A stretch of 64,000 nt of DNA from Isurus oxyrinchus (GCA_026770705.1 JANJGN010000007.1:109306001-109370000); one strand, 5' to 3'; shown: positions 5,492-58,922, numbered from the stretch's first letter. Notes: a model not told the origin generated them from the sequence alone. Program-made: numbers and translations.

Positions 5492-5559
5492 TTATCTGGC
5501 TGTAAATATGCTACACCAACTATGGAAGTTCTTCGTGCCTAGAACGGAAGTGTTCCTAT
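5492..5559 (-). pseudogene. Gene C: candidate short cytoplasmic terminal exon
   Basis: Acceptor aatttcacag|, reading DRNTSVLGTKNFHSWCSIFTAR* in phase 1. The polypyrimidine tract is weak. Confidence 0.35.
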
Positions 5560-5780
5560 CTGTGAAATTACCATTGTTCACCTCGATGAGCTCAAAAATA
5601 AACTGCATAAAATATCATCTAAGAACTGAAGTAGTGTTTTTCAACCTAATGTTACTTATTGCAGGTTAATAAATTAGTTCACATATACTTTCAATCTGTT
5701 ATAATTTCTGTATTTGTATAATTGATGAATATTAAATCTTGAAGTCCAACCATGAATGTGGTGACGTAGCTCCCCCTTAC

Positions 5781-5900
5781 CTTCAGATATTTTGCAGCAG
5801 CAGATTTTACCACAAAGTACCAGTGCAATAATCAGGAGTAGTAAAGCGATTGTTCCACACAGGTAGATCCACCAAGGAAAAGTAGAATTGGAGCCATTTT
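5781..5900 (-). pseudogene. Gene C: transmembrane exon
   Basis: Bounded by ttttgcatgtgtcttgcag| and G|gtaagg, 120 bp, phase 1-1. Reads ENGSNSTFPWWIYLCGTIALLLLIIALVLCGKICCCKISE. Confidence 0.85.
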
Positions 5901-6387
5901 CTGCAAGACACATGCAAAACAAAAAAATAGTCATTCACTTTCGGAAGGAAAGCAATGGTACAGTGTGTTAGCAGGTGCTTAATTCACCTGTCAGACCCCA
6001 GCTCTTTCTCATGGCTCTATATGGGCGATATTGTGAATTTACGCTTCCTGCACAAATACACAATACCAGATTTCACACACAATATTTCAATTACTGCTCT
6101 TGGGCCATAAAAGATTTGAATCATGGCTGTCAAACCGATAAACGTCCATTTTGTGACGTGTAATAAAAGTAAGCTGTTAAAACTGCGTAAAATCATATCA
6201 CTGAGCTCAGCAGATGCAGCTGATACACTATGCCAGTCTCAACCAGCTCCATTGAGTTCACAATTACTGAAAAATCATCAGCACTGCACTTACTGCTTTT
6301 CTGGCATTACCATTAAAACATTTCCTACCAAATGCTTTGAAACGACATTGTACAATGCATTCACAATTAAATAGGTTTTGTTCCTAC

Positions 6388-6683
6388 CTGCAAAGGGAAC
6401 AGTGTATTTGATCCAAGTTGGAACCTTGAGGTTCGAGTGACATACCTCACAGATATAAACAGTCCCACTCTGAACAGGTTGTAGCTCTTCCAAATAACTG
6501 GAAGTTTAATATATTTCCTTAGCATCCTTCTCTCTGGATGTCTCTACTCCAACTGTAGCTTTTTGACCATCTTTACACCAAACAGTGGTGAAATCAGCAG
6601 GATAGAACTTAGATGTTTTACACAAACACGTTAGAGAGCCATTGCAGAAAACATTGGCAAACTCGTCAGAGGAAGTGGAGAAG
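6388..6683 (-). pseudogene. Gene C: Ig C1 exon with 1-bp deletion and stop
   Basis: Bounded by ttttttctatag| and CAG|gtagg. Reads ASPLPL...(frameshift)NGSLTCLCKTSKFYPADFTTVWCKDG...EIY*TSSYLEELQPVQSGTVYICEVCHSNL. It is 296 bp against 297 bp for the paralogous gene A exon. Confidence 0.9.
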
Positions 6684-6919
6684 CTATAGAAAAAATAAAA
6701 ACAAACACGTTTCTTAATTTCCAAGGTGGATACCATATACTGGTATATTCCTCCTGGGCATCATTTCACAATATTGCAGTTGTGCTTTACCTTTGAATAT
6801 CAACTACCCCAATGTTCATAGGAACTACATTCTAGTTGTGATTCATTCTGCCAGGATCATTAAGCTTGGGCCTAATTCAGGCTTGGTCCATATAAAAGAG
6901 AAAATTGTTCACTTAAGAG

Positions 6920-7660
6920 GATAGTTGACAGTGAGTGCCCTTGACATCAAGGCAGCATTTTACCAAGTGTGGCACCAAGAACGCCTGGCTAAACTGAAGT
7001 TTAAGGAAATGAAGGGGGAATCTCTCCACTGGTTGGAGTCATAGCCAATACAAAGGAAGATTGTTGTGGTTGTTGGAGGCTAATCGTCTCAGTCCCATGT
7101 CATTGCCATAGAAGTTGCTCCGGGTTGTGTTCTCGACTCAATCATCTTCAGCTACTTAATCAATGTCTTTCTCTCCTTTATATGGTGAGATGTGAGGATA
7201 CTCCGTGATGATTACACAATGTTCAGTACTATTTGCAATTCTTCACATGCAAAAGCAATCCGTGTCCATCTGCAGGAAAGCCTAGAAAAAAATTAGCCTT
7301 GGGTTGATAAATGACAAACAGCATTGGCATCATCCAAGTGCCAGTCAATAACCATCTCCAACAAGAATAAATTTAACCATCTCCCCATGACATTCAATGG
7401 GATTATCAATGCTGAATCTCCCAATATCAACACCCGTTCGTGATCATTTTTGGGAACCTCAACTCGTTCAGCCATATACATTTTAAACTGTGGCTACTAG
7501 AGCAGGTCAGAGGCTGAGAATTCTGCAGCGAATAACTCACCTTCTGACTCTCCAAATCCCGTTGACTCTCCGCAGAGCAAGAGCCTGGTGATGGAATTGT
7601 CTCCGCCTGCCGTATGAGTGCGGCCCCAACAACACTCACGATGTTCATTTCATCCAGGAC
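6920..7660 (+). mobile_element. LINE RT fragment (second CR1/L2-group family)
   Basis: ALDIKAAF.QVWHQ and AGQRLRIL motifs shared with 3545-3940, 21292-24130 and 48410-50720. Confidence 0.7.
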
Positions 7661-8049
7661 AAACCATTCTTTCAGTTCATTTGATGTACAGGGTCAACTA
7701 GCAATTACTTTGGTATAATTTAACGGTACAGGAAGATTGTGCAGCAAAACGCACTGCAGGCTGGTTGTGCATGAGTGCTGCATGAATCCTTGATCAGCTC
7801 CGATTCGTTCTTCTATATGTTCCTTTATATGCTGGCTCACCTGTTTCACACCTACTTTCCCCTTTGCCTTCTCCGAGCTCATCTTGTTCCCTCCTCATTC
7901 CCATTAAACTGCTAACCATGCAATTTTATTTCTGCCAAAAGAGTGCCATCTTTCTCAGAACGCCGGATTTTCATTCCTCCAATCAGGTTCCTGCCCCGTC
8001 ACAGTCCTGTCAAGTTCACTGGTGACATATAATGCGGCAGAAGTTAACT

Positions 8050-9175
8050 TGGGCCTTTTAGACATATCTGTGGTCCTTTTCATGGTGACCACACTTTCGT
8101 CCTCGACTGCCAATCCACTGTGGTCCAGAAGGGTGGGACTACATTAGTCTGGTTCCATGCCTATCTATGCAGTCATTGTCAGAGAGTTACCTGCAATGGC
8201 TTTTCCTCTTGCAAATATACCATTTCTTTTGGAGTTTCTAAAGATTCAGTCATTGGTTATCTCGCATTTCTCATCCACATGCTGCCACTGGAGGACACCG
8301 TCAAAACACAGGAAGTTTCCACACAGTTGGTGACATCCAATTCTACCTGATCATCACCATTCTCGATATTTCCACTGTGTATTTATCGTCAGACTATTTG
8401 GCATTATATACTGGATAAGCACAGGTTCCGCTAACTAAATATTGGGAAAAGATGAAAACATTGACTTTGGGCACTGCTACCAAACCTTTCCCCAAGCCCT
8501 CTACTCTATCCCACTATTTTGCAAACGTCAGGGGTTCAGTCAGATTGTTCGCAACATTAATGTTATATTTAACCCTGAGATAATCATCCATCATCCTACC
8601 CATGATGGCTTAATTCCACCTCCGTAACTTCACCTCACTCTCCCCTGCCTCGGTCCATCTGCTAAAGAAACCCCCACGTTTACTTTAGACTTTTCTATTC
8701 CAATGCACTCCAGTACAGCCTTACACACTCAAACCTTTCAAACCTTGTGGTCATCCTAATCTCTGCTGGTCCTGTCATAATTTGCTTTGATTTTGGAAAT
8801 TTCCAATTGATTTTCAAATTCGTTCATTGTCTCTCTCCTCTACTTCTGTAACTTCCCGCAGCTAGCAAAGCTCTGAAATACCTGTACTCCACTAATCGTG
8901 GTCTCTTTATCACCCCCGGTTTCAATCAATCCATGACTGGCAGGCATAGGTGAGCTGCCATGATGCTAAGCTTTGGAGTCGCCTCCCTGAACTGCACCTC
9001 TCTCAAACATCTTCTCCCTTTATAAAAATCGATAAAAAACGATTCTCTGATTCAAACATTTGATCATTTGTCCTAATATCACTTCATGTAAGTCGGTGTG
9101 GGACTCTGCTTGATAATCATCCCATTAAGCGCCTTGAGTCACTTTAGTACAATAAAGATGCTATATAAATACACT
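8050..9175 (+). mobile_element. L2 LINE fragment
   Basis: Decayed RT sequence (gactacattagtctggttccatgcctatctat) and an L2-type tail (aagcgccttgag...aaagatgctatataaat). Confidence 0.65.
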
Positions 9176-11321: not shown

Positions 11322-13830
11322 GAACATAGAAACATAGAAATAGAAAATAGGAACATGAGTAGCATATTTGGCCCAGCGTGTCTGTTCCCCCATTCAAAAT
11401 GATAATAGATGATCCTCTCCCTCAGCGCCATACTCCCGCTTTCTCCCCTACCCCTCAGTACCTTTCGAGTTTAGATACCTATGTATTCCCTTTTGAAATG
11501 TATTCAGTCACGTGGCTTCCACAGCCTTCTGTGGTAGAGAATTCCACAGGTTCAACATCCTCTGGGTGATGACATTTTTCCTCATTTCGGCCCTAAATGG
11601 ACTACCCTGAGACTGTGTACACTTGTCCCAGGAACGCTGAAACTGTGACGCCTTGTTCTAAGGGCCAGCACGCCCATCCCCACTCTCAGCCAGGAGAGCC
11701 ATCCACCCTGGCATTCAATCTGTCCAGTCCTATCAGACTTTTATATGCTTCAATTAGATCCCTCCAAACTCCAATGGATGCAGGCCTAATCGACACAATC
11801 TCTCCTCATTTAACAGCCCTACCAGCCCAGGGATCAGCCTGGAGAAGATTAGCTGCACACCCTCCGTGGCAAGCATGTCCTTCCTGAGATAAGGAGACCA
11901 CAACTGCGCACAAAGCTCCAGGTGTGGTCACACAAAGGCTCTGTGCAGCCTCATTGAGGCATCCTTGCTCCTGTGCTCAAGTCTTCTCGAAATGAAGGCC
12001 AACACATAATTTGCCTCCTTAACTGCTTGCTGCACCTGCGTGCTTGCTTTCAGTGACCGGTGTACAAAGTCATCCAGGTCCCTTTGCACATAAGCATTTT
12101 CTAATCTTTCACGCTTTGAATAAATCTCTGCCATTCTGTTTTTCCTACATACTCTTTATTTTCACACTTATCCATGTATTTTCCCTCTCACTCAACTTGT
12201 CTGAACCGCCTTGAAGCCTCTTAAAATCTTCCACACATGTCAATTTCCAATTACTTCTGTGTCGCTTGCAAACTTGGAAATATTACATTTAGTTTCCTCA
12301 TCCAAATCATTGATATAAGTTGTGAATAGCTGGGCCCAAGCACTCATCCCAATGATTACACTAACTGCCACTCTGAAAATACCAATTTATTTCTCCTCCC
12401 AGTTTCCTGCCTGTCAACCAATTCTCAAACGATGTCAGCCTATTACCCAAAATCACGTGTTTTAATTTTGCACATTAATCCCTTCTGTGGCACTTCATCA
12501 AAAGCTTTCTGAAAATCTAAATACACTACATTCACTGGTTCTCCCTTATCTATTCTACAAGGTGCGCCCTCAAAAAGCTCCAGTAGGTTTGTCATACCTG
12601 ATTTTCCTTTCATAAATGCATGTTGACTTTGTATAATCCTCGTGACATTTTCTAACTGCCCTGTTATCACAGCCGTTAAAATAGACTCCAGCATTTTCAG
12701 TACTACTGATAGTCGGCTAACTAGACTGTGATTCCCTGTTTTCTGTGCCCCCCCACCCTCTGTTTTTTTTTTAATAATGGTGTTGCACATGCCACTCTCC
12801 AATCTGCCGAAGCTATTCCAGGATTTCCAGAATTTTGAAAGATGACAGCAAACGCTCCCAATATTTCTATAGCCACTTCCTTTAGTACCCTGGCATGTAG
12901 ATTAACAGGCCCTGGGGATTTATTGTCTTGCAATCCCATCAATTTCTCCACCACTATGTTTTTACAAATATTAATTTCCTTCAATTGCTCCATCCCACTA
13001 GGCCTTCAGTTTCCATACATTTCTGGGAGGTAGTTGTGCCTTCTTCCGTGAAGAAATCAATAAAGTAGCTGTTTAATGGCTCTGCAGTTTCCTTGTTCTC
13101 GGTTATAATCTCTCCAGTTTTGGACATTTGTCTTTCCTAATCTTATTTCTTTTTACATATTTGGAGAAGCATTTACAGTCCACGCGGCTTAGTATTTTTT
13201 TCTAGCAACTTTATATGACTCCTTTTGTGTCGAATACTATCCTTCATTTATATTGTTATCCATCTTCGGGCTGTTATTCCTGTTATGTTGTTTTGCGCTA
13301 GAAGCGAATGTATAATTGTTGGAATGGAGGCATTCCTTCCTTAAATTATAGCCATTGCCTATCCACCATCACGCCTTTTCATTAAGTCTACTAACCTATC
13401 ATAATCAAATCACCCCTCATACCTTCGTAGCTTCAATTGTTTATATATAGGTTCTTAGTTTCGGATTGGCCTACTTTACTTTTCATCCTAATGAAGAATT
13501 CCAACATGTTATCGTCGCTCTTCCCGAAAGAACTCCGCACTACAAGATTATTAATTAACCCCTTTTCATTGCACAATACCAAAGCTAGGGTAGGCTGTTC
13601 TCTAGTTGGTCCCTCGCTGCATTGGTCTAAAAGAAAATCTCGTACACACTCTGCCACAATATTATTTCTAATTTGGTTTGCCAAATCTATATGTAGATTA
13701 AAGTCACCCAGGATCACTGCAACACCCTTGTGATGTGCATCTCTAATTTGCTGTTTAATGCCGCCCCCTACTTTACCGCTACTGTTTAGAGGCATATTGA
13801 CAACCCTCACGAATGTTTTCTGCCCTGTGG
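11322..13830 (-). mobile_element. 5'-truncated CR1 LINE nested inside another CR1 (plus-strand halves at about 10960-11320 and 13836-14110)
   Basis: Endonuclease (ILGDFNL, LVLCNEKGLI) and RT (SQHAFMKGKS, VYLDFQKAFDEVP) remnants and a catagaaa tail. A probable imperfect TSD gtggca(g/c)aataa lies at both ends. Confidence 0.85.
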
Positions 13831-17209: not shown

Positions 17210-17425
17210 GTCATTTCATTTCAAGTCATTTCATTCTTCCTCCATAGATGAGTAAGCATTTACATTAAGAAGGTAAGAGATCATATTATATTGTGAAATC
17301 CTCTGTCCAAGGACAACTCACGTGTAGAACTACGTTGGTGAAAGCAGAATAAGAATGAATACCTGAAGGCAGCCGCCTATCACAGAAAAAATATTTGGCC
17401 TGAGGAGGACATTTCTTCAGTTGTG
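17210..17425 (+). pseudogene. Gene D: 5' half of a degenerate V exon, cut off by a CR1 insertion
   Basis: After tgctttcag|, frameshifted pieces EIILYCE / PLSKDNSRVELRW*KQNKNEYLKAAAYHRK / IFGLRRTFLQLW match the C...WWK...EYL...RK pattern of the gene A and B V domains. CR1 endonuclease sequence starts immediately afterwards. Confidence 0.65.
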
Positions 17426-17620
17426 GAAATAGAAACGAATAATTACGATCTGATTGCCATTAGAGAGACATGGCCGCAGATGACATAGATTAGGACCTGA
17501 ATATTGAAGGGGGTGTGACATTTAGGAAGGACATGAAGTAAGGGACAGATGGAGGGGTGGTTCTGTTAATTAATGAATGGATGAGCACATTAGGGAGGGA
17601 TGATCAGATTTGATGGCTCG
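17426..17620 (+). mobile_element. CR1 endonuclease fragment interrupting the gene D V exon
   Basis: EIETNNYDLIAIRETW...FRKD..GGV APE endonuclease N-terminal motifs. Confidence 0.7.
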
Positions 17621-32428: not shown

Positions 32429-32483
32429 ATGTCCGTGAGGATATTTTATCTTTGCCTGACTCTCCGTGGGATTATTCATACAG
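32429..32483 (+). pseudogene. Gene B exon 1: leader
   Basis: ATG opens MSVRIFYLCLTLRGIIHT. The exon is 55 bp with a phase-1 donor CAG|gtacg and parallels the gene A leader. Confidence 0.8.
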
Positions 32484-32650: not shown

Positions 32651-32981
32651 CCTCGGACGGCACTTCATTCAGTGTCTCTCAAACGCCCAGAGAAGTGACT
32701 GTAATTTATGGGGGTGGGGGGGGGGGGGGGTGGGGTGGCGGAATATTACCCCCTGCTGCACATTTCCCCTCAGCACCATTCTTCACTACAGTAAATTGGT
32801 GGAAGGAGCCTGGGAATGAATACCTTCACACAAGCGCCGATCGCAGAAGTGGAAAAGGAAACTAGAGCTTTCTTTCACTTACTGGCCGTGACTTTCCAAG
32901 ACTCTGAAATTTATCACAGTGTACGGATCCGTCAAGGAATGGATCAAATAAATTAAACCGGATCGCATCTAATTGTGTATG
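32651..32981 (+). pseudogene. Gene B exon 2: degenerate VJ-type Ig V domain
   Basis: Bounded by tttctcacag| and G|gtaagc. Pieces in shifted frames: ASDGTSFSVSQTPREVTVIYGG / RNITPCCTFP / VNWWKEPGNEYL / AFFHLLAVTFQDSEIYHS...IN*TGSHLIVY. It has a poly-G expansion, frameshifts, loss of the F-strand Cys and an in-frame stop. Confidence 0.85.
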
Positions 32982-33875: not shown

Positions 33876-34211
33876 TCGTTCCAGTCCCGTTCAATGTTGT
33901 CACCCGGTTCCCTGATGGAAATTCATCTGTTTCTTTGATTCTGCTGTGTAAAACAGATGCATTTTATCCGGCGATTTTGAACCTCATTTGGTATAAAAAT
34001 GGCGCCGAAACTACCTTAGGAATACACACAATGAAAGTACAGAAGTACAGAACAGTGACAGGTTGTATGAAAGTTTCTGTTTAAATACAGCCTCTCCTGA
34101 ACGATACTAAGTATATCTGTTTGGTATCACATGTCTCCCTCGAGACTCCCGTTGTCGTCGCCCGTACTATTTCTAAATTCATTCAAGTTACGAGGTCAAC
34201 AGTTCAAAAAG
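33876..34211 (+). pseudogene. Gene B exon 3: Ig C1 domain with in-frame stop
   Basis: Acceptor ttttgcag|, then VVPVPFNVV...LILLCKTDAFYPAILNLIWYKNG...YICLVSHVSLETP. There is an 8-bp duplication (aagtacag x2) and a TAA at 34082-34084. Donor G|gtgagt. Confidence 0.88.
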
Positions 34212-36005: not shown

Positions 36006-36007
36006 TG

Positions 36008-38005: not shown

Positions 38006-38195
38006 GCTTAGACATATCTTTTTTCAGCAATGTTAAAGTTCTGTTCTACGAAACGACTATTTATCCAATCTTTCTTACTGCCGTTCCATACTACGGTATT
38101 ATTGAAAGAACCGTCATAGTTTAAGCAGTAAAGTATCTTGACATCTATTTTTATGCAACGCCAGCCAAAACTTAATGTTCCTCTTAATATTGCAA

Positions 38196-38309
38196 GTAAT
38201 ATCCATAATCCAGTTGTCTGCTGGGCTCCAAGTTGTGCAATAGCTGGACTGGCGTTTCTCGTGCTACTGATTGTCATTGGAACGCGCCGCCGACTTCAGA
38301 ATAATGATG
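38196..38309 (+). pseudogene. Gene B exon 4: transmembrane exon
   Basis: NIHNPVVCWAPSCAIAGLAFLVLLIVIGTRRRLQNND: an uncharged hydrophobic helix followed by an RRR stop-transfer, with donor G|gtaaga. The exon is 114 bp and phase 1-1 only if the acceptor has mutated (ttgcaa instead of ttgcag). Confidence 0.75.
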
Positions 38310-38998
38310 GTAAGATTTATTTTTAACATTAGCGTTTAATGCAAATCTCAGTGTTAGTGACCGTCATCGGGTAACATGGAGGGCGGTGGGAGTGGGAGCA
38401 GCAGAATTCAATCAGAAGTTACATTTGAAAACACTGATTTTTTTTGCGGGAAGCCCCGAAGGATCTCAACGCATTTTATAACGCCGAAATACACACGGTT
38501 CGGAATTAACATGGAGACAAATTTTGCGGCAAGAACATTCCAACAGAAATTTCCTCATTGCAGCGTGACAAATGATTTGGAACCTGACAGGCAATCATTT
38601 TCCAACCTATTCCGTTATCGATACGCACCTAGTTGAATTTGGTCATTTGAAGCTTCCGCCCGGGGATGGTTGCGCACATAGGAACGTGAGGAATAAGAGC
38701 AGAGGTCGTCCCTTCGAGCTTTTTGCCTGTTCCGCCCCGCAATAAATTCATTGTTGATCTTCTAACTCAAATGTATTTTTTTTCACAACCTTGATCCCAT
38801 AGGTGTCCAAAAATATTTCCTTATTTTCCGAAAAAAACTTTTTTAAAAATTTCTGTTGATCGCTACAAGTGCCGTGATTTTAACACGGCGCATTCAAAAT
38901 TGATTTTTTTTTCAACACTAGGCAGGCCTTCGCAATCTCTGGCACGGAAATTGAGTAAATATTTCAATCTATCAACGTCAAATCTCACTCATTTCCAA

Positions 38999-39570: not shown

Positions 39571-40026
39571 GGAGCAGCCGCTGAGACCGTATATTATGCT
39601 GCTTTAGATTTCAGCAGAGCTGGGGGAAATGCAGGACATAAATGTGAAGAGGGGAGAAGCGTGTAGGTTCAGGTAGGACTCAGTACCAAATGCACAATCA
39701 TAGATGATTAGGGTGACATTCATGAAATAAAGGAAGGCATTTTCTTCTGTTGACTTTGATCGCGTGATGTTTCGAAGGTTATTTGTTGTGTCCTTTTGAT
39801 GGCAATTTTGAGCAACAGTGAACAAATATTGCAAAAAGACAAATTAATATGCCCAAATATTGGCTTAACAGGTCCATCAAAGAGCAGTCGATCACAAGCT
39901 CCAGCATTGACTGGCTCAGTAAAAGCGGGATATAAAACAATAACGAAAAGAAGTACAGAGCACACTAAGCTGAAGACTGAAAAACAAAGAAGTAAAAGAG
40001 GTTATTTACGCAGAAGCAAGAAATAA
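39571..40026 (+). pseudogene. Gene B cytoplasmic tail region with ITIM and degenerate Tyr motifs
   Basis: Acceptor ttccttctggccattgcag|, then GAAAETVYYAALDF (ITIM V-x-Y-x-x-L) and RSV*VQV (TAG where a Tyr would fit). Downstream KLICPNI, STEHTKL and EVIYAEA resemble decayed Tyr motifs. The internal exon structure is unresolved. Confidence 0.6.
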
Positions 40027-42504: not shown

Positions 42505-44107
42505 ACCGAATCACAGGATGCAGAAGAGGCCAGTCGGCCATTCCAGTCTACTTTGACACGTGAGAAACACCTGACCTACCTACCTAATCCCAATTACCAG
42601 CACGTGGCTCATAGCCCTGAATGTTATGATGTGCTAAGTGCTCATCCAAGTACTTTTAAAAGGATGTGAGGCAACCCGCCTCCACCATCCACCTAGGCAG
42701 TGTATTACAGACCGTCACCACACTCTGAGTAAAGAAAGTTTTTCCTCACATCCCCGCTAAACCTAATGCCCCTCACCTTGAATTTATGTCCCCTTGTGAC
42801 TGACCCTTCAACTGAGGGGAACAGCTGTTCCCTATCCACTCTGTCAATTCCCCTCATAACCTTGTATACCTCGATCAGGTTGCCCCTCAGCCTTCTCTAC
42901 TCCAACGAAAACAAACTAAGCCTATCCAACCTCTCTTCATAATTTAAATGTTTCATCCCAGACAACAGCCTGGTGAATCTCCTCTGCACCCCCTCCAGTG
43001 CAATCACATCCTTCCTATAATGCGGTGACCAGAACTGCACACAGTACTCCAGCTGTGGCCTCACCAAGGTTCTATACAACTCCAACATGACCTCCCTACT
43101 TTTGTCATCTATGCCTCGATTGATAAAGGCAAGTGTCACATATGCCTTTTTCACCACCCCACTAACATGCTCCTCCGCCTTCAGAGATCTATGGACACAC
43201 GCCCAGCTCCCTTTGTTCCTCAGAACTTCCTATTGTCATGCCGTTCATTGAATATTTCTTTGTCAAATTATTCCTTCCAAAGTGTATCACCTCGCAGTTT
43301 TCAGGGTTAAATTTCATCTGTCACTTAGTGACCCATTTGCCATACTGTCTATATCTCCTTGTAGCCCAAGACACTCAACGTCACTGTTGACCACCCGGCC
43401 AATCTTTGAATCATCCGCAAATTTACTAATCCTACCCCCCTCATAGCCATCTATGTTGTTTATATAAATTACAAATAACAGGGGACCGAGCACAGATCCC
43501 CGTGGTACGTCACTGGACACTGGCTTCCAGTGACTAAATCAGCCTTCTGTCATCACCCTCTGCCTCCTACAACTAAGGCAATTTTGAGTCCATCTTATCA
43601 AATTACCCTGTATCCCATGCACATCTGCCTTCTTTACAAATCTCCCATGTGGGACCTTGTCAAGCACTTTGCTGAAATCCGTATAAACTACATCAACTAC
43701 AATATCCTCATCTACACACCAGGTCACCTCCACGAAATAATCAATCAAATTTGTTCGGAATGACCTCGCTCTGACAAAGCCATGCTGACTATCCCAGATC
43801 AAACCTTGCATCTCCAAGTGGAGATAGATTCTCTCCTTCAGAAGTTTTTTTCCAATAGTTTCCCTACAACTGACGTGAGACTCAGTGGCCTGTAGTTCAC
43901 TGGCTTATCTCTACCACCGTTCTTAAATAGGGTAACCACGTTAGCTGTTCTGCAGTCCTCTGGCACATGCCACATGGCCAGAGAGGAATTAAAAATTCGG
44001 GTCACAGCCCATGCGATCTCCTCCCTTGCCTTCCTCAGCAGTCTGGGACACAAATCATCCAGACCTGCATATTTGTCCATTTTTAAGCCTGCCAGCACCT
44101 CCAATAC
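42505..44107 (-). mobile_element. CR1 LINE (same subfamily as 28945-29975)
   Basis: NYRPLSLTSVVGKLLE, SQHGFVRARS, VPRGSVLGPLLF, KFADDSK and LYRTLVRPQLEYCVQFWSP. Confidence 0.9.
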
Positions 44108-47769: not shown

Positions 47770-48370
47770 GCCGGCTCTCCAAAAGAGCATTATGATCTGG
47801 TACCATTCTCCAGCCTTTTCCCCCTACCTCTGCACATTGTTCTATTCAAATAATCATTGATTGCCTCGATTGTACCTACCTCCACCATACATACAGGCAG
47901 TGCATTCCAGACCAGAACCACTTATTGTGTCAAAAGGTTTTTCACATCACATTTGCTTCTTTTGCAGATCACTTCAAATCTGTACGCTTTCGTTCTTGAT
48001 TCTTTTAAGAGTGGGAACAGTTTCTCCCTATCTACTCTGCGCAGCGTCCACATGATTTTGGAAACTTCTATCAAATCTCCACATAGCCTTCTTGTTACCA
48101 AGGAAAATGTTCCTAACTTCTCCAATCTATCCTCATAGCTGAAGTTCCTCATCCCTGGGACCATTCTCGTCAACCTCTTCTGCACTCTGGCCAAGTTGTT
48201 CACATCCTTCCTATAATATCCTGCTCAGAACTGTACACAATATTCCAGCTGAGGTCTAAGGAGGGTCTTATGTAAATTTAGCACAACCACCCTGCTCTCG
48301 TACTCTGCTTCTATTAATAATGCCAAGAATATTATGTCCTTTACTAACTGTTCTCTCTATCTGTTCTGTG
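47770..48370 (-). mobile_element. CR1 LINE 3' fragment
   Basis: RVQKRLTRMVPGMRNFSYEDRLEKLG...GDLIEVSK. Confidence 0.8.
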
Positions 48371-48409
48371 CAAAAATCTACCCGTCACCTGATTGCTATA
48401 TTCTACAAT

Positions 48410-50720: not shown

Positions 50721-53700
50721 TCCACTGGGTGGGGCAGCCCCTTTTTAATATTAAGATAAAAGCAAAATACTGTGAATGCTGGAAATCTGAAGCAAAAACA
50801 GAAAATTCTGGGAAAACTCAGCAAGTGTAGCAGTATCTGTGGAGGGAGAAACAGACTTAATGTTTCGAGTCCTTTTGCCGCTTCTTCAGAGGGTGAGTTT
50901 TTCCTGCATTTTCTGTTTCTGTTCCTTTTTTTAATATTTGATGGAACTGAGTGGCTAGCTAGCCATCTCAGAGAGTAGTTGCGAGTGAATCATATTGCTG
51001 TGTGGTTAGAGTCACATGCAGACCATACCGTGTAAGGATGGCGGATCTCTTTCCCTAAAATACGCTGATGAACCAAATGGGTTTATAAGCCGGAATCTCC
51101 ATTCTTGGTCACTCGCCTTTGACTTTCACCGGTATGCATCCTGGATGGATAAAATGTGTCCATTTGGATGTCTCCCCAACATATGTACGGGCAAACATCA
51201 ACACACACAAATACACGCATGCTTGTGCCACCTTCCTTGGCAGGGCAGCAGAAGTCGTGTAATGTTCCACACTGGGGATAATCACTTCGAGGAAATAGGG
51301 CAATTCAGTGTCTTAGTTGTTATTCCTGACTCCAATTGTAGTTATCTTATTTAAGCTACACTTGAACAGGTAAGTTTATCTAGCTAATCCACTTTTTCCA
51401 GTTTCAGTGCGGGAAATTGTGCGTTTGTCTCAACGGTATCTGTCTGCATCATGATGAGATCACTCCCTGCTTCAGTCCTATTTAACTTAGCGCCGATCCT
51501 CTCACTGCTGGTTTAGGCCTCATATTCTCAACGGCCATTTGCTTTTAAAATTAATTGAAATATTTAACATTTAGTTTTAATTAATTTCGAAGATTTCTCA
51601 ATTTGAAATTGGATATTTGATTTTGCAACTGTGGATAACATTTTACAATGCGAAATGGTGCCCGACCATTTGCGCATAATTGCGAAGGAAAGTAATGCAT
51701 TTGCGTTGATTTTGCGCCTTAATCGCCTACACGGATCAACTTACAGCATTTCACAGAAAAAAAGTAGTTAATTTGGAATTGAATTATTGTTCATAATTTA
51801 GCAAATATGTTGTCAATTAGAGCAGGATGCTCTAAAGGCAGAAAATCATGTTGATAAATTTCTCGATGATTTACTCGCTTTCAATATCTTAGTGTTTGGG
51901 ACCAGGTGATCGAAATATCTCCTTGTTCTTATTTGAAATAGTACAGTGAGATATTTTGCAGCCAGGTAAGCCTCCAGATGTTAGTTTAAGGTTTCTCCTG
52001 GAGAGGAGAAAATGGAAAATGCAGCATTCTATTTGTTTTCACATAATAATTGTGAATAGAGATAGAAATACAACCAACATGGCCTGTTGTTAAGGAGCTC
52101 GTAAACCAACTTAGATTTAAATCCTATGAACAGGAATTTCCCTCTCAGTCACTGCCAATGACGTTGGTAAAAATACAAATGACATTTGCACTTACTCAAA
52201 ATGTGATACGTATAAATATCAGCAATTGAATTTATTGAAAAGTATTGCCAGTTGATAACATTCATACAACACGATATGAACCAGCCCCCAAAAATTCAAA
52301 CGAGGACTCAGCTACAGCCATCTCTCCATTCTTATTATTGCATTTACATAGACTGCATCAAGCTCAATTTATATACGTTAGCCAACTAACAATGATATTT
52401 GTATATTGTAATATTACAGGAATATTGTGTAGCGAAATACAACGTAAACTGGCTATAAGCGAATGCTGCATGAATCCTTGATCCATCTCGATTGTGGCTC
52501 CTTCCTCTCGCTCCTTGCTTTCCTGTGTTTCTTTTTTCGAACTTTCCTTGGTATCGGAACAACAGTTCTTCATTCCCAAAGGCTAAGGTATTCCGCTCTT
52601 GCAATTATGAACAACAGAGGCGGAGATTCTCAGCCGTTCTTTGCCAGGCTATTCAAAACAAAATCCAGGAGCATTTTTAAACGATGCACTTTATTTTTTT
52701 CTCTCTTTTACATCCACAGGCAGTTCCCATTTAATCATCAAAATCCCAAGAACTGCAAATACACTCAGCATTGCACCTATATTTCTAGACTCAAAATATG
52801 CACACTCGTCCGGATCAAAGTCAAATTATTATTAAGTTAAAGGAACTGTCTCCAAATATATCCATGCATTGTGATTCGACAATAATTATTAAAATATCCT
52901 TGCAATAAATGCAACCAGGTCTGATATAAAGTTAATTTTAAAAAATATGCCATCCTCCCCAGTGTCACAAAACATCAGCTTCGTAAATTTGCAATTTTGT
53001 TTTCATTTTCGTTCGATGCTGCACTTTGATTCATGATTGTTGTGTGCATGTAATTGTGTGTCTTATCCCTTTCCTATAAAAGTTATGTAAGATAAAAATA
53101 AACTGCTGACTACCTAAGCGGGAATTGGATTTTCACTCATTCAATGTAGAGTGACACTGAAATAAAAATAGAGTTCTTTCTATATATATATATATATATT
53201 CGAATTGAAAAATTTCAAACCGTCTACGCTCACTTCGTGATCAATGCTCTCCTGCACACATAAAAAAGCACGCCTTAATTCTAAATAAAAGCACATGGGA
53301 ACCATAGGTACCGCACGGAACCATACCAGTTATACAATATCACGTTAGATTTCCTCTGTGTTGCACTAGATGGTTCCAGTTCAGCAGCAGTTAAAGAGCT
53401 AAACCTACCCTGAGTTTTCAGGGAGAGGAAGAGAGCAATTAGCATTATATTCTGCTCGCCATCCTTATCGAGGGATCTTTGATGAAATTGCTAATCTAAT
53501 GAGGGCAAATTCGAGCTCAACCACGTGTTGCTTGTCGCCACTTCTCTGTAGCCCACATCTTAACATATAACACGGAAGTAAGATATGGCGGGCTAGGAAG
53601 GTTGTGTGCATCAACAAAGAGGATGACCTGATATCGGTAACCACACGGAAATAGCTCACCTTGAGAGCATATACACTAAATTGAACATCCCTTCCAGATC

Positions 53701-55301
53701 ACATTAATTTTCGCTGGCTTTAATGAAATAATGGAAGACGGCACTCGGAAAGTAGCGCATGTGTTATGAATTCTTCAACCATTACATAAAAATCTTGGAA
53801 AATTTAAGAAGGGTTTTGCATTGATACAAAACTTTTCACGGCCACTGGAAGTGCTAAGAATACACAGAAAATTGCACAGTATATTCCCAACAATAAATTA
53901 TCCTGAGATAACTGAAAAATGAATCGATTTCAGTGAAGTAAATTGAGGGGTAACTGTTGGTCAGGACGCCGGAGAGATCTCCAATGTTTGGTTAAGAAAG
54001 TGCGTCACGGGGTCTTTTACGGCACCGTAGAGCGCAGAGGGACTCATTTTAAAGTTTTGAAAAATAAATCAAGCTTCCGGCAGTGCTGCTCTGAAATATT
54101 AGCCTAGATTTTCTGCTCAAGTCTCTTAGTGAGAAGCTGAAGCCAGGACCTTTTTAATGAGAGGAGTTACCGCCAAGCCAGCGCACAAAATTGATCTTAA
54201 GTGTTGATTATTTGACTTATCCTGCAAGAAATTGAATATGAAAACTGATATGTTACTAAATAAAAACAAAAAAATGTTGCAAATGTTCAGCAGATCAGGT
54301 CCCTGTGGACAGGGAAACATTTAAAGTTTAGTGTCTCTGACTTTTCATCACCATTAATATGAAAATCGTGGTGTTTTAAGTGTCGGTCTTCTTTGTTGTC
54401 AGTTATTTAGTAACAAATTTTAGCACTACTAATCGTAAATCCGAAATTACGTAAGAAATAACTGATAAAAGCACATTTCTGATTTCCAGCCTACCAATGC
54501 TGCCTGTCTATATACATTGAATATGATTTACCGATTTAAAATGGCGTCCTCTCATCTTCAATTGAAAGTAGGTTACATGGTCCACAATTATGCCCACCAA
54601 TCCAAGAATTATCAAAAAACCCAGGACAAGCCGTGAAATGGCAATGTTGCGGAAACTCTGATCTACAATGCAGGATTGAAGCAAACAGATGAAATTGATG
54701 TATATAAGTATTATCGAACGTAAACAATAATAGAGGCTTACACAAATGAGAGGCGTTGATGAAGTTGCTAGTTTAAACTTGAGGGCGGATTTTAAATTGC
54801 CGATAATTAACTAGGGAACGGTAATAGCCTCAAAACATGCTCGGTAAACTGGCAACATTCCAGCGTACACCACGATGCATTTCACCTTCCCAGACAGTCT
54901 GTTGCCTTGTTCCGGCGCCAATTTTCCCGGTTCTGAGCTTCTCCTCAAATTCAATTAGTGGTTCTATCATGAACATGGGACACTGATGTCCATTTCATCA
55001 TCGAATTTGTATGCCCTGCTCTTTCTGGTAGTTTTATGAGCAATAGAGATAATGATGCCCTAAACAAATAACTTCCAAAATAGTTTTGAAAAGGTAGGAA
55101 AAACAGAAGTGGCCCTCTGGACCCCATAATAATAATTTTGCACGCTGCAGCCAGTTCACCCAGCACCATCGCTACGCAATCAAAACTGGTGTAGCTTGCT
55201 GCCGATCCAGCTGTGTTCTGTCCGCAATGCTAACTTCATCGGGACAACGCATATGCTTTGGAATTCCTGATTTTCACTCAGGCAGACTGGGCCGCCTCCC
55301 C

Positions 55302-55390
55302 TCATGGCAGATTCGTTGTCACCAACAAAAGGGCCAAGTGCCAAATTCTCTGTATATGCCTATAATTCCCACCATTCTTCAAGTTTGCAC
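55302..55390 (-). CDS. Gene A candidate terminal exon (short hydrophobic C-terminus, possible GPI-anchor signal)
   Basis: Acceptor ...ttagcactctag| lies 630 bp past the C1 donor. In phase 1 it reads GANLKNGGNYRHIQRIWHLALLLVTTNLP*. No full-length TM exon was found downstream. The four exons total 747 nt (248 aa). Confidence 0.55.
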
Positions 55391-56019
55391 CTAGAGTGCT
55401 AATAACCATAATAAAGTATTCTTTATTGGAGTAAAGGGTTCAGTACGACAATTACCGCCAGAGTAGATGTAGAAACAATTCTTCATAACTCAGAAATTTG
55501 AAAAACAAAAACTTAAAAAGTGAAGGAATTCAGTTAACGAAGTAAATTCAGGTAATAGAAGGTTTTCGGTTAGTAGAAGGTATTTGTAAAAGTGAAATGT
55601 ATGGATAAAAGAGGAATAGATGAATAATGCTCAGAAGAAACTGGATCATGGATGAAACGCTCTTGGCAGATGATGGATAAAGCTCCACATAGCTTCTGGC
55701 CCAATTAATAGTGACTCTGTGAGAATCCACCCATTTTGTATGTAACTTCATTTCATTTGACGAGGAATGAGCTTTCTGTTTTGGAGTAGTTCATACATCA
55801 ACCACCCATTTCAGATCTTTTCAGGGAGATTATCTCCCCCACCACCCATACAAACCGTCTTGATTATTTTATTTTATTCCCATAAAAGTGTCATTGAGAG
55901 TAAATACAATGCACATCCACCCTGTAAACTCGAGTTTGAGCAGCAGTTCAGCTCCAGGTCTAATAAGCAAATACAGGTTGGAGCACATACCCACTTGTTG
56001 TAAATGCTTGCAATCTTAC

Positions 56020-56316
56020 CTTGGTTGATGGTGTAGCTGACACTGGCAGGCACCTCGAGAGAGACGTGATACACCAGACAGGTATAAACGACTCTCTTCC
56101 AGACAGGCTGTGCTTCTTCCAAAGAACTGGTGACCTCAAAGAGCCCATCCACGCTCTCGTTTTTCACAGTTTCTATTCCAGTCAGAATTTGCACACCATC
56201 TCTTTGCCAGAAAACTGTTAAATCCTTCGGGTAAAAGGCAGCAGTTTTACACTGGAGTTTCAGAGAAGTGGCTGAAATCCCTTCAACAGGAATGATTTTT
56301 AGGGGGCTTGGAGGAA
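56020..56316 (-). CDS. Gene A exon 3: Ig C1-set domain
   Basis: Acceptor ttctttttctccgtcaaag| and donor G|gtaaga, 297 bp, phase 1-1, open frame. Motifs L-x-C-x-x-x-x-F-Y-P-x-x-L-x-V-x-W (LQCKTAAFYPKDLTVFW), DGLFEVTSSL and YTCLVYHVSL are C1-set hallmarks. Confidence 0.93.
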
Positions 56317-58358
56317 CTTTGACGGAGAAAAAGAACATAGTTTTTTCAATTTAAAGGAATACATTCTTATATGTATGTCCTAGTTATGCTATTTAATCCC
56401 TACTGTGGCAAAAGTTACCTGATCTATCGTTTTGTAAACGTTGTGTAAAAACTGATTGTGAAAATTATTTAACGGCGCACAACAAAATCTTCGGATCTAT
56501 TGCAAATGATAAAAAACGAGGATGAATCTCCCAAGGCTGAAAACATCCAGGGAAGTACGCGTTACTGCTCTGAATGGAAACATCAAGACCTGCCGCGGGA
56601 TTTTTGTTTGCAGCTGTGGCCCAGAATAAAATTCCTCTCTAAATACAGACAGCGCAAAACACTCCGGACGGAACAGTGGAATTGTCTGACGTTCTTCCAG
56701 TGATTACCTATCCCCGTAGTTATCATTTAATATCTTGTGCATCTATTTCAAAGTTAATCGATTTTTAGAATATTTCATATATTGCAAAGTATATTTTGTT
56801 TTGACTGTGATTATTGAGAAGACGATGTTAAATTGAAGTATCTCCATGTCAATATGGACTCCAGCTTTGATAATTTAAAACGTACAGATTAGAATTTGTG
56901 CAATATAATCAATTACTTAACTATTCAGTGTTTCTGTCGGAACCTTCAGATTGTACCGTTTTCACCTAAGGAGCTTTCTCCAGAGGGAGAACCGTGGATT
57001 GGAATATTCGTCACGTCATGCCAGGATAACGTTGGCAAACATGTCTCGCGGTGGCGATAACCGCATACGTTCAAATGGGGGAAACCGAATTGTATATCTA
57101 AATTAGAATGCCTGTCTTACATTTTTTCAGATTTTTGCCCTTCGCCGGGTCCATTAGGACTGTTGCTCTTTTTTGCTTGAAAATGAAAAAGTTTATATCA
57201 TTTATGCATTTACCATTTGCTAATCTTAACCTGTGTTCGCTGGATCTACTGTCACATCTCTTCTGGAAGCATGGGCCATTTATTAGGTTTGCCTTGTTTT
57301 ATCAGTTTATTACGAACACTATCCTTAACATTTTTCATTAAACGTTTATTTAATCGAACAGTGCCAATATCAAATGATGAAATTAAGGATATTTTTAACT
57401 TCAAAATTATGCCTATACTCCCGGTCGCAGTGTTGACTGTCGAGAAAATACCCAGAATGCCTCCATTGCTTTACCATGGATCTGTTTTATAGACAATGCT
57501 TTAGATTTTCCAAGGAGGCGACTGAGGGTACTTCTCCCTGCTCTCTTGTCCTAAGTTCCCTGTGAGGTTTTGGGGAGTGTAAATGGAAATCATGAATGAC
57601 AAATGTCGGGGACCAGGAATTTACAGGAACGTTCGGTGATAGCCCGTCTGGAATTGTGGGTTTGGGCATATGAAAAAAGTCCAATTGGCCGACGGCAGAG
57701 GCTCTCAAAACGGGAATTGATATCTTCACTGTATTTCATGTGCTGGGGCTTTGGTTGAAAACCAGAATTGAGGGCAAGATCAACACCTGCCCTCTAAAAT
57801 GGATTGTAGGATTATTTAGTGAAGAGTTTGGCGGAAGGTTAGTTGGTTTGTGAAATATGCGTGGCTATAGCAGGAGGTTACCTTTCTGAGTTTGTAATGA
57901 AGATAACCTGTGGGGATGGATTAGATGAACTTAATGTCATATCAAAGACTTCACCGAGGAGGTATTAAATTTTTCCCATTGTTGCATTTTTGGCACTATT
58001 GTTTCGGTGAGTAGAAACCTGATCATCTTATCCCGTTGATTAATATCAAATTAAGGTTTAAGCAATTATTTTTCGTTTCAGCATCTTGGTTCAGTAACAA
58101 TTGTAATGGCACTGAAAACACTCATTGGAAGAAAAACACTTTGGAATATCACAAGGACAAGGGGTGGGTGAAATGAGAGTTGTGCAGAAACGCAAAACGG
58201 ACGGAAGAGAATCAATGGCCGTTGATAAATGGAAAGAAAATCCGCAGCAGTGTAAGACGAATCCGCTATCACCAGATTTTTATCTAGTGATAAAAGTTCG
58301 AATTACGTATTTCACACACAGCTGAAAAGCGCCCTCTCCTCAGTACAATTGCACTTAC

Positions 58359-58664
58359 CGCACACAATGAGCTGGGAGCCACTTCCAACTCCAATAGAGT
58401 TTTGCTGATGTTTTACTTTACAGTAATACATCCCGGAATCGGCAACACTCGCATTCAGAACTTCAAATGAACTACTTCCCTTTTTTACATTGACTCGCTT
58501 CCGACTGTCCCGTTCCAGAAACGATTTCTCGTCGCGTTTCCACCAATGAACTTCAGGAGTGTCTTCAAATATGGGAAATGTGCAGAACATAGAAACATTG
58601 TCTCCCCTGGCAGCCTTCAAGAGTTTAGGGAACTGATCCACTTTGCTCGAAGTTACTTTGGAGG
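58359..58664 (-). CDS. Gene A exon 2: Ig V-set domain with germline-joined J-like G strand
   Basis: Acceptor ttttttgacag| and donor G|gtaagt, 306 bp, phase 1-1, open frame. Translation ASKVTSSKVDQFPKLLKAARGDNVSMFC...VHWWK...DSGMYYC...GVGSGSQLIVC has the B-strand Cys, C-strand Trp, D-x-G-x-Y-Y-C and a G-x-G-S-x-L-x-V J-like motif. Confidence 0.93.
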
Positions 58665-58867
58665 CTGTCAAAAAATTTTAAAAAGGGGTCCGTGATAACA
58701 GTTTCATACCTCAGGGAAAGAAATAAATATCTAGGAGAAGTAAAATACAAGAACAATTAAAAAGCACCAACAATAGGATTGGAGAAGTAGCACTTCTAAT
58801 TTGCAATGCATAAACGTTCTGGAATATTCCAAAATATAATTTAAGGTATTCAAACAACTCATGTTAC

Positions 58868-58922
58868 CTGACCACACCATGCCCAGGAGAACCAAGTACC
58901 GAACTGTAGTTCTCACCAACAT
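58868..58922 (-). CDS. Gene A exon 1: signal peptide of a VJ-C1 Ig-superfamily protein
   Basis: ATG at 58922 opens MLVRTTVRYLVLLGMVWS. The exon is 55 bp and ends in a phase-1 donor CAG|gtaac. It has the same length as, and a similar sequence to, the gene B leader. Confidence 0.85.

What the first reader, a model, noticed from the sequence alone, without database searches (positions are those of the whole stretch)
5492..58922. Cluster of non-rearranging VJ-C1 receptors with three different membrane/signalling ends
Seen in sequence: at least three, probably four, paralogous Ig-superfamily genes in mixed orientation. Genes A and B share a 55-bp leader and a single V exon with a germline J-like G strand. 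A, B and C share a C1 exon with C-K-T-x-x-F-Y-P. The 3' ends differ: A has a short hydrophobic tail, B an uncharged TM plus ITIM, and C an uncharged TM plus CCC and no Tyr motif. Established knowledge: V(J)+C1 without RSS is rare outside Ig/TCR and occurs in SIRP, B7-H6 and tapasin-type families, and it is the proposed form of the pre-RAG antigen-receptor ancestor. Inference: this is a birth-and-death, paired-receptor-like family in a cartilaginous fish that may be annotated only as 'SIRP-like' or not at all.
Basis: partly seen in the sequence, partly recalled or inferred. Interest (0 to 1): 0.8.

Follow-up and report, generated by a model that had tools for sequence, protein, structure and literature searches.

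The report
Shark V-C1 receptor gene plus dead copies
This stretch of shark DNA holds one intact gene and the decayed remains of at least two others from a large, unnamed family of antibody-like cell-surface receptors found in sharks, rays and chimaeras.

Summary
The Ig exons are real. There are three C1 exons with C-K-T-x-x-F-Y-P, two 55-bp leaders, one intact V exon ending in a built-in J-like strand, one wrecked V exon and one V fragment.

Only gene A (minus strand, 58922-52583) is intact. It is a transmembrane exon at 54.6 kb (Arg, 16 hydrophobic residues, Asp) plus a small last exon at 52.6 kb. Both are conserved in catshark and sevengill shark proteins, and the last exon also in a horn shark protein. 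This is the activating-type, short-tailed form.

Gene B is an inhibitory-type gene with an ITIM. It is a pseudogene, with frameshifts and stops in V, C1 and tail. Gene C (Cys-rich membrane end) is a V-less remnant with a stop in C1.

The three belong to three old subfamilies of one chondrichthyan family. Public annotations call it SIRP-alpha-like, B7-H6-like, lambda-like or tapasin-like.

In my C1 tree the family stands apart from the SIRP-like outgroups. I found no paper on it in the held library.

This scan has already found the family several times elsewhere in this genome. No RNA evidence, synteny or structure could be obtained.

The parts
58868..58922 (-). Gene A exon 1: 55-bp split leader (ATG at 58922-58920, GT donor)
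   Evidence: Read directly.
58359..58664 (-). Gene A exon 2: intact V/I-type domain with a germline J-like G strand (G-S-G-S-Q-L-I-V); 306 nt, phase 1/1
   Evidence: Pfam I-set 38.9 and V-set 35.9 bits. Family V HMM 119.9 bits. 77-79% identical to horn shark proteins.
56020..56316 (-). Gene A exon 3: intact C1-set domain (C-K-T-A-A-F-Y-P ... Y-T-C-L-V-Y-H); 297 nt, phase 1/1
   Evidence: Pfam C1-set 36.8 bits. Family C1 HMM 129.6 bits.
54532..54662 (-). Gene A exon 4: stalk, transmembrane segment R-x16-D and start of the short tail; AG acceptor, GTAAAT donor
   Evidence: 76% identical over 38 aa to catshark P0005 (E 4e-16). Module found by script.
52583..52648 (-). Gene A exon 5: last coding exon (G-K-E-R-L-R-I-S-A-S ... 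stop TAG 52585-52583)
   Evidence: Weak but consistent matches to the C-terminal ends of P0005, P0008 and P0010 (55-71% identity, E 0.003-0.03). Sequence read.
55302..55392 (-).
   Evidence: No family match here. A 16-nt deletion at 55365 in DNA contigs of runs X1 and X2.
32429..32483 (+). Pseudogene B: 55-bp leader
   Evidence: Read directly.
32651..32981 (+). Pseudogene B: wrecked V exon. Matches lie in three frames, with two stops, a poly-G run, both Cys lost and a length of 331 nt.
33876..34211 (+). Pseudogene B: C1 exon with in-frame TAA at 34082-34084
   Evidence: 83.0 bits. Sister to Mustelus P0039 in the tree (support 100/66).
38186..38314 (+). Pseudogene B: uncharged transmembrane exon
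   Evidence: 60% identical to sevengill shark P0137 (E 5e-11).
39571..40024 (+). Pseudogene B: cytoplasmic remnants. One ITIM survives (V-Y-Y-A-A-L). A stop replaces the next tyrosine motif, Tyr is replaced by His in a later one, and the last motif is in another frame.
6388..6683 (-). Remnant C: C1 exon with in-frame TAA at 6506-6508; 296 nt, not a multiple of 3
   Evidence: 89.3 bits. Sister to Hemiscyllium P0058 (100/95*).
5764..5880 (-). Remnant C: transmembrane exon followed by C-C-C
   Evidence: 55% identity over a 40-column alignment to P0058, E 1.7e-7.
17300..17431 (+). Solitary V-exon fragment with a stop in the W-W-K motif
   Evidence: 17.1 bits, matching HMM positions 28-71 only.

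Best explanation
The window is a piece of a large multigene cluster of a cartilaginous-fish family of type I membrane receptors. Each has one V/I-type domain with a built-in J-like strand and one C1 domain. No rearrangement is involved.

The family behaves as paired receptors. Similar outer parts are joined either to an uncharged membrane segment with a long multi-tyrosine (ITIM-type) tail, or to a conserved membrane module with Arg near the outer face and Asp 17 positions later, followed by a short tail.

Gene A is an intact five-exon member of the second type. The exon lengths sum to 855 nt, which is 284 codons plus a stop. I infer that its Arg recruits an ITAM-bearing adaptor of the FcR-gamma, CD3-zeta or DAP12 kind, so that binding of a ligand activates the cell.

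Gene B was an inhibitory member and is now a pseudogene. Gene C is a dead remnant of a third type with a Cys-rich membrane end and no tyrosines.

Shown here: the exons, the defects, the homologies and the family's spread. Inferred only: adaptor pairing, signalling direction, the cell type that expresses it and the ligand.
For: GENE A INTACT. All splice sites and frames were read. The exon lengths 55+306+297+131+66 sum to 855 nt. The TM exon is 76% identical to catshark P0005. The last exon matches the ends of P0005, P0008 and P0010.

All 12 indels listed for the DNA contigs of other individuals lie outside the four exons that the laid stretch covered. The 5 listed coding differences are 2 synonymous and 3 missense, with no stop.

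FAMILY. In one search, 28 of 28 hits are chondrichthyan. In one search, the first 35 of 42 profile hits (E <= 7e-69) are chondrichthyan, and the next hit is a teleost protein at 2e-25. In one search, 63 representative clusters have E <= 1e-30.

PAIRED TYPES. The R/Q-x16-D/E module occurs in 17 of 116 family proteins, always with 55 or fewer residues after it. These proteins fall in several C1 clades. Long tails with 2-5 tyrosine motifs go with uncharged TM segments. Horn shark proteins with gene A's type of outer part carry long tyrosine tails (P0009, P0011, P0012, P0014).

PSEUDOGENES.

OLD SUBFAMILIES. In the C1 tree, A sits in a 12-row clade of sharks and rays (97/99*), C is sister to P0058 (100/95*) and B is sister to P0039 (100/66).
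Against: There is no RNA evidence. The runs that hold the locus are DNA, and the one guessed-RNA run I laid gave nothing. The five-exon model therefore rests on homology with predicted proteins of other species.

The Arg lies at the edge of the membrane segment rather than in its middle, and it is paired with an Asp. This is not the classic single Lys or Arg of DAP12 partners. 2 of the 17 module copies have Gln instead of Arg.

A membrane-proximal V-T-Y-F-Q-L follows the Asp and formally fits an ITIM or YxxL pattern. My scripted split of membrane charge against tyrosine motifs was noisy (27, 24, 23 and 14 in the four cells).

B's placement in the tree is not starred. No adaptor gene, ligand or expressing cell was examined.
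Confidence: 0.7

Rival explanations
1. The family is simply the cartilaginous-fish SIRP family: true co-orthologues of SIRP-alpha/beta that have one C1 domain instead of two. The window would then be an ordinary SIRP cluster.
For: Automatic names: 8 of 28 hits are 'tyrosine-protein phosphatase non-receptor type substrate 1-like' and 2 are 'SIRP beta-1(-like)'. The family profile hits solved SIRP-alpha (2wng, 115 bits) and SIRP-gamma (101 bits) among the best 60 chains. Of the 6 bony-vertebrate proteins I looked up among the hits of the library-wide search, the lungfish and frog ones carry SIRP-like automatic names and the skink one has a V domain that looked SIRP-like to me from recall. C1 domains of the family, of these SIRP-like proteins and of a caecilian type group together (100/97*) apart from Ig heavy-chain C domains. 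Long tails carry several tyrosine motifs.
Against: The architecture is V-C1, not V-C1-C1. Only 3 family proteins showed two C1 matches. The family (49 rows) is one side of a 95/86* branch that excludes the lungfish and skink SIRP-like C1 domains. The family V HMM scores SIRP-like V domains at only 20-25 bits, against 39-48 bits for another bony-vertebrate type. A lambda light chain matches the profile about as well in a single stretch (74.5 bits). The charged membrane module (Arg...Asp at the edges) differs from what I recall of SIRP-beta, a mid-membrane Lys.
Confidence: 0.25
2. Gene A is a short-tailed, non-activating member. It could be a decoy, or a receptor that signals through its own membrane-proximal Y-x-x-L. 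The Arg and Asp would only mark the ends of the membrane helix.
For: Arg and Asp sit at the two ends of a 16-residue hydrophobic core. 2 of 17 module copies have Gln for Arg. V-T-Y-F-Q-L follows the Asp, and related motifs occur in P0005 and P0001.
Against: The exact spacing (16 residues) and both charged ends are kept across several subfamilies and across distant sharks, which suggests a binding role. The tyrosine is not kept in the sevengill shark protein P0010. It also lies 3 residues from the membrane, which from general knowledge is too close for SH2 docking.
Confidence: 0.15
3. Gene A is also not functional: it is unexpressed, or broken outside the parts I could check. The whole window would then be a graveyard.
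For: No RNA run held the V exon. Two of three neighbouring copies are dead.
Against: All five exons are open with consensus splice sites. Identity to other species' proteins reaches 66-79% in the V and C1 exons. Variants in other individuals introduce no stop or frameshift in the exons covered.
Confidence: 0.12
4. These are germline-joined immunoglobulin light-chain genes, or B7-H6-type ligands, as some automatic names say.
For: Names: 'immunoglobulin lambda-1 light chain-like' (3 of 28) and 'natural cytotoxicity triggering receptor 3 ligand 1-like' (6 of 28). A lambda chain is the best single-stretch PDB match.
Against: Conserved transmembrane and signalling exons are present. Only 53 residues lie between the V-domain cysteines, and I-set scores above V-set. 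Family members score above 250 bits against the profile, while the lambda chain scores 74.5. No B7-H6 chain was among the 60 PDB matches shown. The frog protein that looked B7-like to me falls outside the family.
Confidence: 0.03

Closest known systems
SIRP family (SIRP-alpha, -beta, -gamma), paired myeloid receptors
   Same: N-terminal V-type domain with a J-like strand encoded in one exon and followed by a C1-set domain. Inhibitory members have several tyrosine motifs, and short-tailed members have a charged membrane segment. It is the only non-Ig V-C1 receptor family among the best solved-structure matches of the family profile and the commonest automatic name.
   Different: One C1 domain instead of two. 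Separate clade in the C1 tree (95/86*). Low V-domain scores against SIRP-like V domains. The charged module is Arg...Asp at the helix ends. The resemblance of the tyrosine tails to SIRP-alpha's is recalled only and was not tested.
UrIg / UrIg2 (non-rearranging shark VJ-C genes; PMC12227049, section 7 read)
   Same: Shark genes with a split leader, a single VJ exon without RSS and C1-type domains. The UrIg2 structure 9dmx is the top PDB match of gene A's C1 exon and second for the family profile.
   Different: [quoted passage not shown] Here there is one C1 and a large multigene family with ITIM or charged-membrane ends. The high PDB scores are sums over three C domains.
Immunoglobulin lambda light chain
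   Same: V(J)-C1 layout. It is the best single-stretch sequence match in the PDB (74.5 bits over V+C).
   Different: No RSS. Membrane and signalling exons are present. The V domain is short, with 53 residues between its cysteines.
Unnamed bony-vertebrate V(J)-C1-TM(Lys) proteins (caecilian P0164, mudminnow P0194, unnamed P0161)
   Same: They are the best non-chondrichthyan V-domain scores against the family HMM (38.7-47.5 bits). They have V(J)-C1, a charged membrane segment and a short tail.
   Different: They fall outside the family in the C1 tree and are unresolved in the V tree. They have a mid-membrane Lys. Whether they are the 'PRARP' genes of Fu et al. 2019 is only my guess, because that paper was not held.

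Membership tests
SIRP (signal-regulatory proteins) | Three-domain ectodomain V-C1-C1 (feature recalled) | tested here: not met
   Gene A has one C1 exon, and the six-frame HMM scan found no other near it. Only P0006, P0016 and P0035 showed two C1 matches among family proteins.
SIRP (signal-regulatory proteins) | Domains group inside the SIRP clade in trees | tested here: not met
   C1 tree: 49 family rows lie on one side of a 95/86* branch, with lungfish and skink SIRP-like C1 domains on the other. Caveat: the lungfish outgroup's SIRP name is automatic, the skink outgroup is an unnamed hypothetical protein that I took for SIRP-like from its V domain (recall), and outgroups are few.
SIRP (signal-regulatory proteins) | Inhibitory member with a multi-tyrosine tail, and a short-tailed member with a charged membrane residue | tested here: met
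   Met at family level. In this window the short-tailed form is intact and the inhibitory form is a pseudogene.
SIRP (signal-regulatory proteins) | CD47 binding; synteny with the SIRP region | not testable with these tools
Ig C1-set domain | Passes the Pfam C1-set model | tested here: met
   PF07654 scores 36.8 bits against a cut-off of 21.
V-set domain with germline J | V-set fold including the C'' strand, and a G-x-G-x-x-L-x-V G strand in the same exon | tested here: inconclusive
   The J-like motif is present in the V exon before the donor, and V-set scores 35.9 bits against a cut-off of 26. But I-set scores higher (38.9), the top PDB matches are I-set domains, and only 53 residues separate the cysteines.
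Rearranging Ig/TCR genes | Recombination signal sequences flanking V | tested here: not met
   No heptamer-spacer-nonamer site in the window (nonamer allowed up to 2 mismatches). V and J-like parts are contiguous.
UrIg / UrIg2 | VJ followed by several C1-type domains | tested here: not met
   A single C1 exon. The feature is taken from section 7 of PMC12227049.
B7-H6 (NCR3LG1) | Closest relatives are B7-family V-C1 ligands | tested here: inconclusive
   No B7-H6 chain among the 60 PDB matches shown. The frog protein that looked B7-like to me falls outside the family. No curated B7-H6 sequence was available, and the 2012 B7H6 paper was not held.
PRARP (Fu et al. 2019) | Unknown to me in detail (recalled only) | not testable with these tools
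   The paper was not held and no named PRARP sequence was obtained.
Paired activating/inhibitory Ig-like receptors (a functional kind) | Near-identical ectodomains joined to opposite signalling ends within a species | tested here: met
   P0067 (Arg...Asp module; species not looked up) lies next to the sevengill shark protein P0137 (4 tyrosine motifs) in one 99* C1 clade. Horn shark and catshark proteins of gene A's type carry both kinds of end.

The most novel reading that the evidence does not exclude
The V(J)-C1 chains with the conserved Arg-x16-Asp membrane module would not be SIRP-like singletons. They would pair through their C1 domains, as TCR and Ig chains do, and dock to CD3- or FcR-gamma-type ITAM adaptors. 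That would make them a living, non-rearranging receptor complex built like a T-cell receptor, close to the form that the RAG transposon invaded. Gene A has a Cys at the V-C1 junction that could help pairing. The unnamed bony-vertebrate V(J)-C1-TM(Lys) proteins would be its surviving relatives outside cartilaginous fish.
Probability: 0.08. Interest if true: 0.8.

Novelty: new variant of a known kind. Interest (0 to 1): 0.4.

Why it matters
Paired activating and inhibitory Ig-like receptors are known mainly from mammals (SIRP, KIR, LILR) and bony fish (NITR). A large family of this kind built from an antigen-receptor-like V(J)-C1 unit, shared by sharks, rays and chimaeras, would date the design to the base of jawed vertebrates. 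It would also give a non-rearranging comparison for Ig, TCR and UrIg.

For this window the value is narrower:
- It corrects the model of gene A and shows the conserved Arg...Asp membrane exon.
- It shows that two of the three 'receptors' are dead.
- It shows that one cluster mixes three anciently separated subfamilies.

The proteins are already in public databases under misleading automatic names, and this scan has met the family repeatedly. The window is a useful example rather than a discovery.

Tried and rejected
RNA evidence. The look-up of sequencing runs with the V exon found 6 holders of unknown kind from two studies, and no holder on record as RNA. Read laying on 53100-59050 showed that X1-X3 are DNA contigs covering introns and exons alike at 95-99% identity. 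The one guessed-RNA run I laid (X10) gave nothing. Splicing and expression therefore stay unshown.

The 8 MHC-related notes of this scan that were listed all lie on other pieces of the assembly. That is a lead only and says little.

The protein atlas gave no usable hit for an inhibitory tail.

An inhibitory-type TM exon for gene A. A relaxed tblastn with horn shark and catshark tails found none between 52 and 56 kb.

A V exon for gene C. None was found with gene A's V, with all family proteins, with P0058 under relaxed settings, or with the V HMM.

Named outgroups. The word-indexed search with the family profile returned no SIRP, IgL, TCR, tapasin or B7-H6 of bony vertebrates. Outgroups had to be taken from the unnamed library hits and named afterwards. 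The trees therefore lack curated IgL, TCR, UrIg, NKp30, tapasin and B7-H6 rows.

Rows left out of trees. In one search, domains covering under 80% of the HMM were dropped, which removed gene C's C1, and so were isoforms P0002-P0004. In some searches I used 46 chosen family proteins of about 116, plus domain thresholds. B's V exon and the 17.3-kb fragment were never put in a tree.

My first scripted test of 'basic membrane residue versus tyrosine motifs' was too crude and gave no clean split. A first regex for the module found nothing because of a spacing error and was corrected.

Pfam on ten retroelement-like ORFs gave one weak reverse-transcriptase match below cut-off.

Literature. Searches found no paper on this family in the held library. 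Four relevant papers were not held: Fu 2019, Flajnik 2023 in J Immunol, Flajnik 2012 and Ohta & Flajnik 2015. Most subscription journals are not searched. I did not ask for supplements. Those of PMC12227049 and PMC10751288 may list other VJ-C1 genes.

Full report
WHAT IS IN THE WINDOW. The window has no N and about 40% G+C. A six-frame motif scan, tblastn with gene A's own exons, tblastn with 103 database relatives and a six-frame scan with family HMMs all find the same Ig-type pieces and no others.

- C1-type exons: 56316-56020 (-), 33876-34211 (+) and 6683-6388 (-). They score 129.6, 83.0 and 89.3 bits.
- V-type sequence: 58664-58359 (-, 119.9 bits), 32651-32981 (+, three pieces in three frames) and 17300-17431 (+, a partial match).
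- All three C1 exons carry C-K-T-x-x-F-Y-P. These are 3 of the 6 matches to the looser pattern.

GENE A (minus strand) is intact.

- The leader is 55 bp with a GT donor.
- The V exon is 306 nt in phase 1/1. It holds both cysteines, D-S-G-M-Y-Y-C and G-S-G-S-Q-L-I-V, and then a GTAAGT donor.
- The C1 exon is 297 nt.

That exon matches nothing in the family. DNA contigs of two other samples lack 16 nt inside it.

The real continuation came from the one database hit to the C1 exon, catshark XP_038662025 (P0001, 66% identical). Its membrane segment matches an exon at 54662-54532, and that exon is 76% identical to P0005 over 38 residues, E 4e-16. A last exon at 52648-52583 matches the C-terminal ends of catshark, horn shark and sevengill shark proteins at 55-71% identity. 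Those matches are individually weak, E 0.003-0.03.

The five exon lengths sum to 855 nt, which is 284 codons plus a stop.

All 12 listed indels in other individuals' DNA fall outside the four exons that were covered. The 5 listed coding differences are 2 synonymous and 3 missense. The tool left 92 further differences and 3 indels unlisted.

GENE B (plus strand) is a pseudogene.

- Its leader is fine.
- Its V exon is 331 nt and contains a run of G where the first cysteine should be.
- The V exon matches relatives in three different frames, has two stops, and has Ser where the second cysteine should be.
- Its C1 exon has TAA at 34082-34084.
- Its membrane exon (38186-38314) and first cytoplasmic motif (V-Y-Y-A-A-L) are recognisable.
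- The next motif holds a stop in place of Tyr, a later one has His for Tyr, and the last lies in another frame.

GENE C (minus strand) is a remnant.

- It has a C1 exon of 296 nt with TAA at 6506-6508.
- It has a membrane exon followed by C-C-C. This is homologous to the epaulette shark and bamboo shark protein P0058, whose tail has no tyrosine.
- No V exon was found.

The fragment at 17.3 kb is on the other strand and has a stop.

THE FAMILY. P0001 finds 28 proteins at E <= 0.001, and all 28 are from sharks, rays or the elephant shark. Their automatic names are:

| Automatic name | Count of 28 |
|---|---|
| SIRP-alpha-like | 8 |
| B7-H6-like | 6 |
| lambda-light-chain-like | 3 |
| tapasin-related-like | 2 |
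| SIRP-beta-like | 2 |
| TCR-beta-like | 1 |
| unnamed | 6 |

A profile of 45 members finds 35 chondrichthyan proteins at E <= 7e-69. There is then a gap to a teleost protein at 2e-25.

A search of every protein in a 1.84-billion library gives 1600 hits at E <= 0.001 and 63 at E <= 1e-30. I looked up 10 family-range hits. Nine carry names, and all 9 are chondrichthyan.

I then looked up 10 lower or long-branched hits. Three are chondrichthyan family members and one is shark IgNAR. Six are from bony vertebrates, and the lungfish and frog ones are auto-named SIRP-like.

WHERE A, B AND C SIT. In a careful C1 tree (65 rows, 102 columns):

- The family's 49 rows are one side of a starred branch (95/86*).
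- Gene A lies in a 12-row clade of sharks and rays (97/99*).
- C is sister to P0058 (100/95*).
- B is sister to a smooth-hound protein (100/66, not starred).

The three are therefore old paralogues, not local duplicates. In the V tree (54 rows) gene A lies in the matching 11-row clade (95/96*), but family monophyly is weak (72/87).

TWO KINDS OF END. 17 of 116 family proteins carry a membrane module of Arg (Gln in 2), exactly 16 uncharged residues, then Asp or Glu. At most 55 residues follow it. These proteins fall in several C1 clades, and gene A has the module.

Other members have uncharged segments and tails of 70-150 residues with 2-5 tyrosine motifs. Horn shark proteins with gene A's type of outer part have such tails. 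This is the pattern of paired receptors.

The idea that the Arg recruits an ITAM adaptor is inference from how mammalian activating receptors work. That knowledge is recalled and was not tested here.

COMPARISON WITH KNOWN FAMILIES. Pfam calls the second domain C1-set. It scores the first domain slightly higher as I-set than as V-set. The first domain has only 53 residues between its cysteines. It is therefore a short V/I-type domain with a J-like last strand.

There is no RSS in the window.

The family profile's best solved matches are a lambda light chain (74.5 bits in one stretch), UrIg2, SIRP-alpha and SIRP-gamma. Totals there are inflated for chains with several C domains.

For nurse shark UrIg2 the paper reports nine C1-type domains (PMC12227049, section 7 read), so this is not UrIg.

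SIRP has two C1 domains (recalled), and its C1 domains fall outside the family in my tree. I therefore do not file the family as SIRP, though it works like one and may be its distant sister.

The best-scoring V domains outside cartilaginous fish belong to unnamed V(J)-C1 proteins with a membrane Lys, from a caecilian, a mudminnow and an unnamed assembly. I could not identify them.

LITERATURE. Seven searches and passages of five papers show no description of this family. Four relevant papers were not held. Supplements were not seen.

EARLIER NOTES OF THIS SCAN. The same family was reported at least eight times elsewhere in this genome, several times on the same piece of the assembly. The conclusions were the same: SIRP-like, inconsistent names, no paper. 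One note on this window called gene A a 248-aa, possibly GPI-anchored protein, and my results contradict that.

VERDICT. The window holds one live activating-type receptor gene and the remains of two or three dead relatives. They belong to a real, unnamed and apparently unstudied cartilaginous-fish family.

Noticed in passing
window 32706-32737: A run of about 30 G with a few T sits inside pseudogene B's V exon, where relatives have the strand with the first cysteine. I could not tell whether it is a real insertion or an assembly or sequencing artefact.
   Followed up: no
window 32915: A perfect CACAGTG heptamer lies in pseudogene B's V exon at the codons where relatives have Tyr-His-Cys. No nonamer follows. 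About 8 such heptamers (either orientation) are expected by chance in 64 kb (my own arithmetic), so this is probably chance.
   Followed up: partly
P0018 (horn shark): Its C1 domain groups with gene A's subfamily, but its V domain groups with gene C's subfamily (P0058, P0069). This suggests exon shuffling or gene conversion between subfamilies.
   Followed up: no
P0006 (whitespotted bamboo shark), P0016 (elephant shark), P0035: A few family proteins show two C1 domains, near-identical in P0006 and P0035. These could be recent exon duplications giving a SIRP-like V-C1-C1 layout, or annotation artefacts.
   Followed up: no
P0164 (caecilian), P0194 (mudminnow), P0161 (unnamed assembly): These bony-vertebrate V(J)-C1 proteins have a Lys in the membrane segment and a short tail. 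They give the best non-chondrichthyan V-domain scores against the shark family HMM, and I could not name them.
   Followed up: partly
window 53100-59050, runs X1-X3: Public DNA runs filed under the same organism differ from the window by roughly 1-5% all along the stretch. That points to another individual, haplotype or close species. One difference (58388) changes Val to Asp in the J-like strand, giving the G-D-G-S-G-S seen in other species.
   Followed up: partly
window 12443-13810, 28117-29710, 43539-43817, 47922-48203 (minus strand): These ORF fragments look like decayed retroelement proteins lying between the receptor genes. Only 1 of 10 gave a Pfam match (reverse transcriptase, 24.9 bits, below cut-off).
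   Followed up: partly
window 58361-58363: Gene A has a Cys as the last full codon of its V exon, where most relatives have Tyr or His. A bamboo shark protein (P0006) and the unlooked-up protein P0130 also have a Cys at that place. It could make an interchain bond.
   Followed up: no
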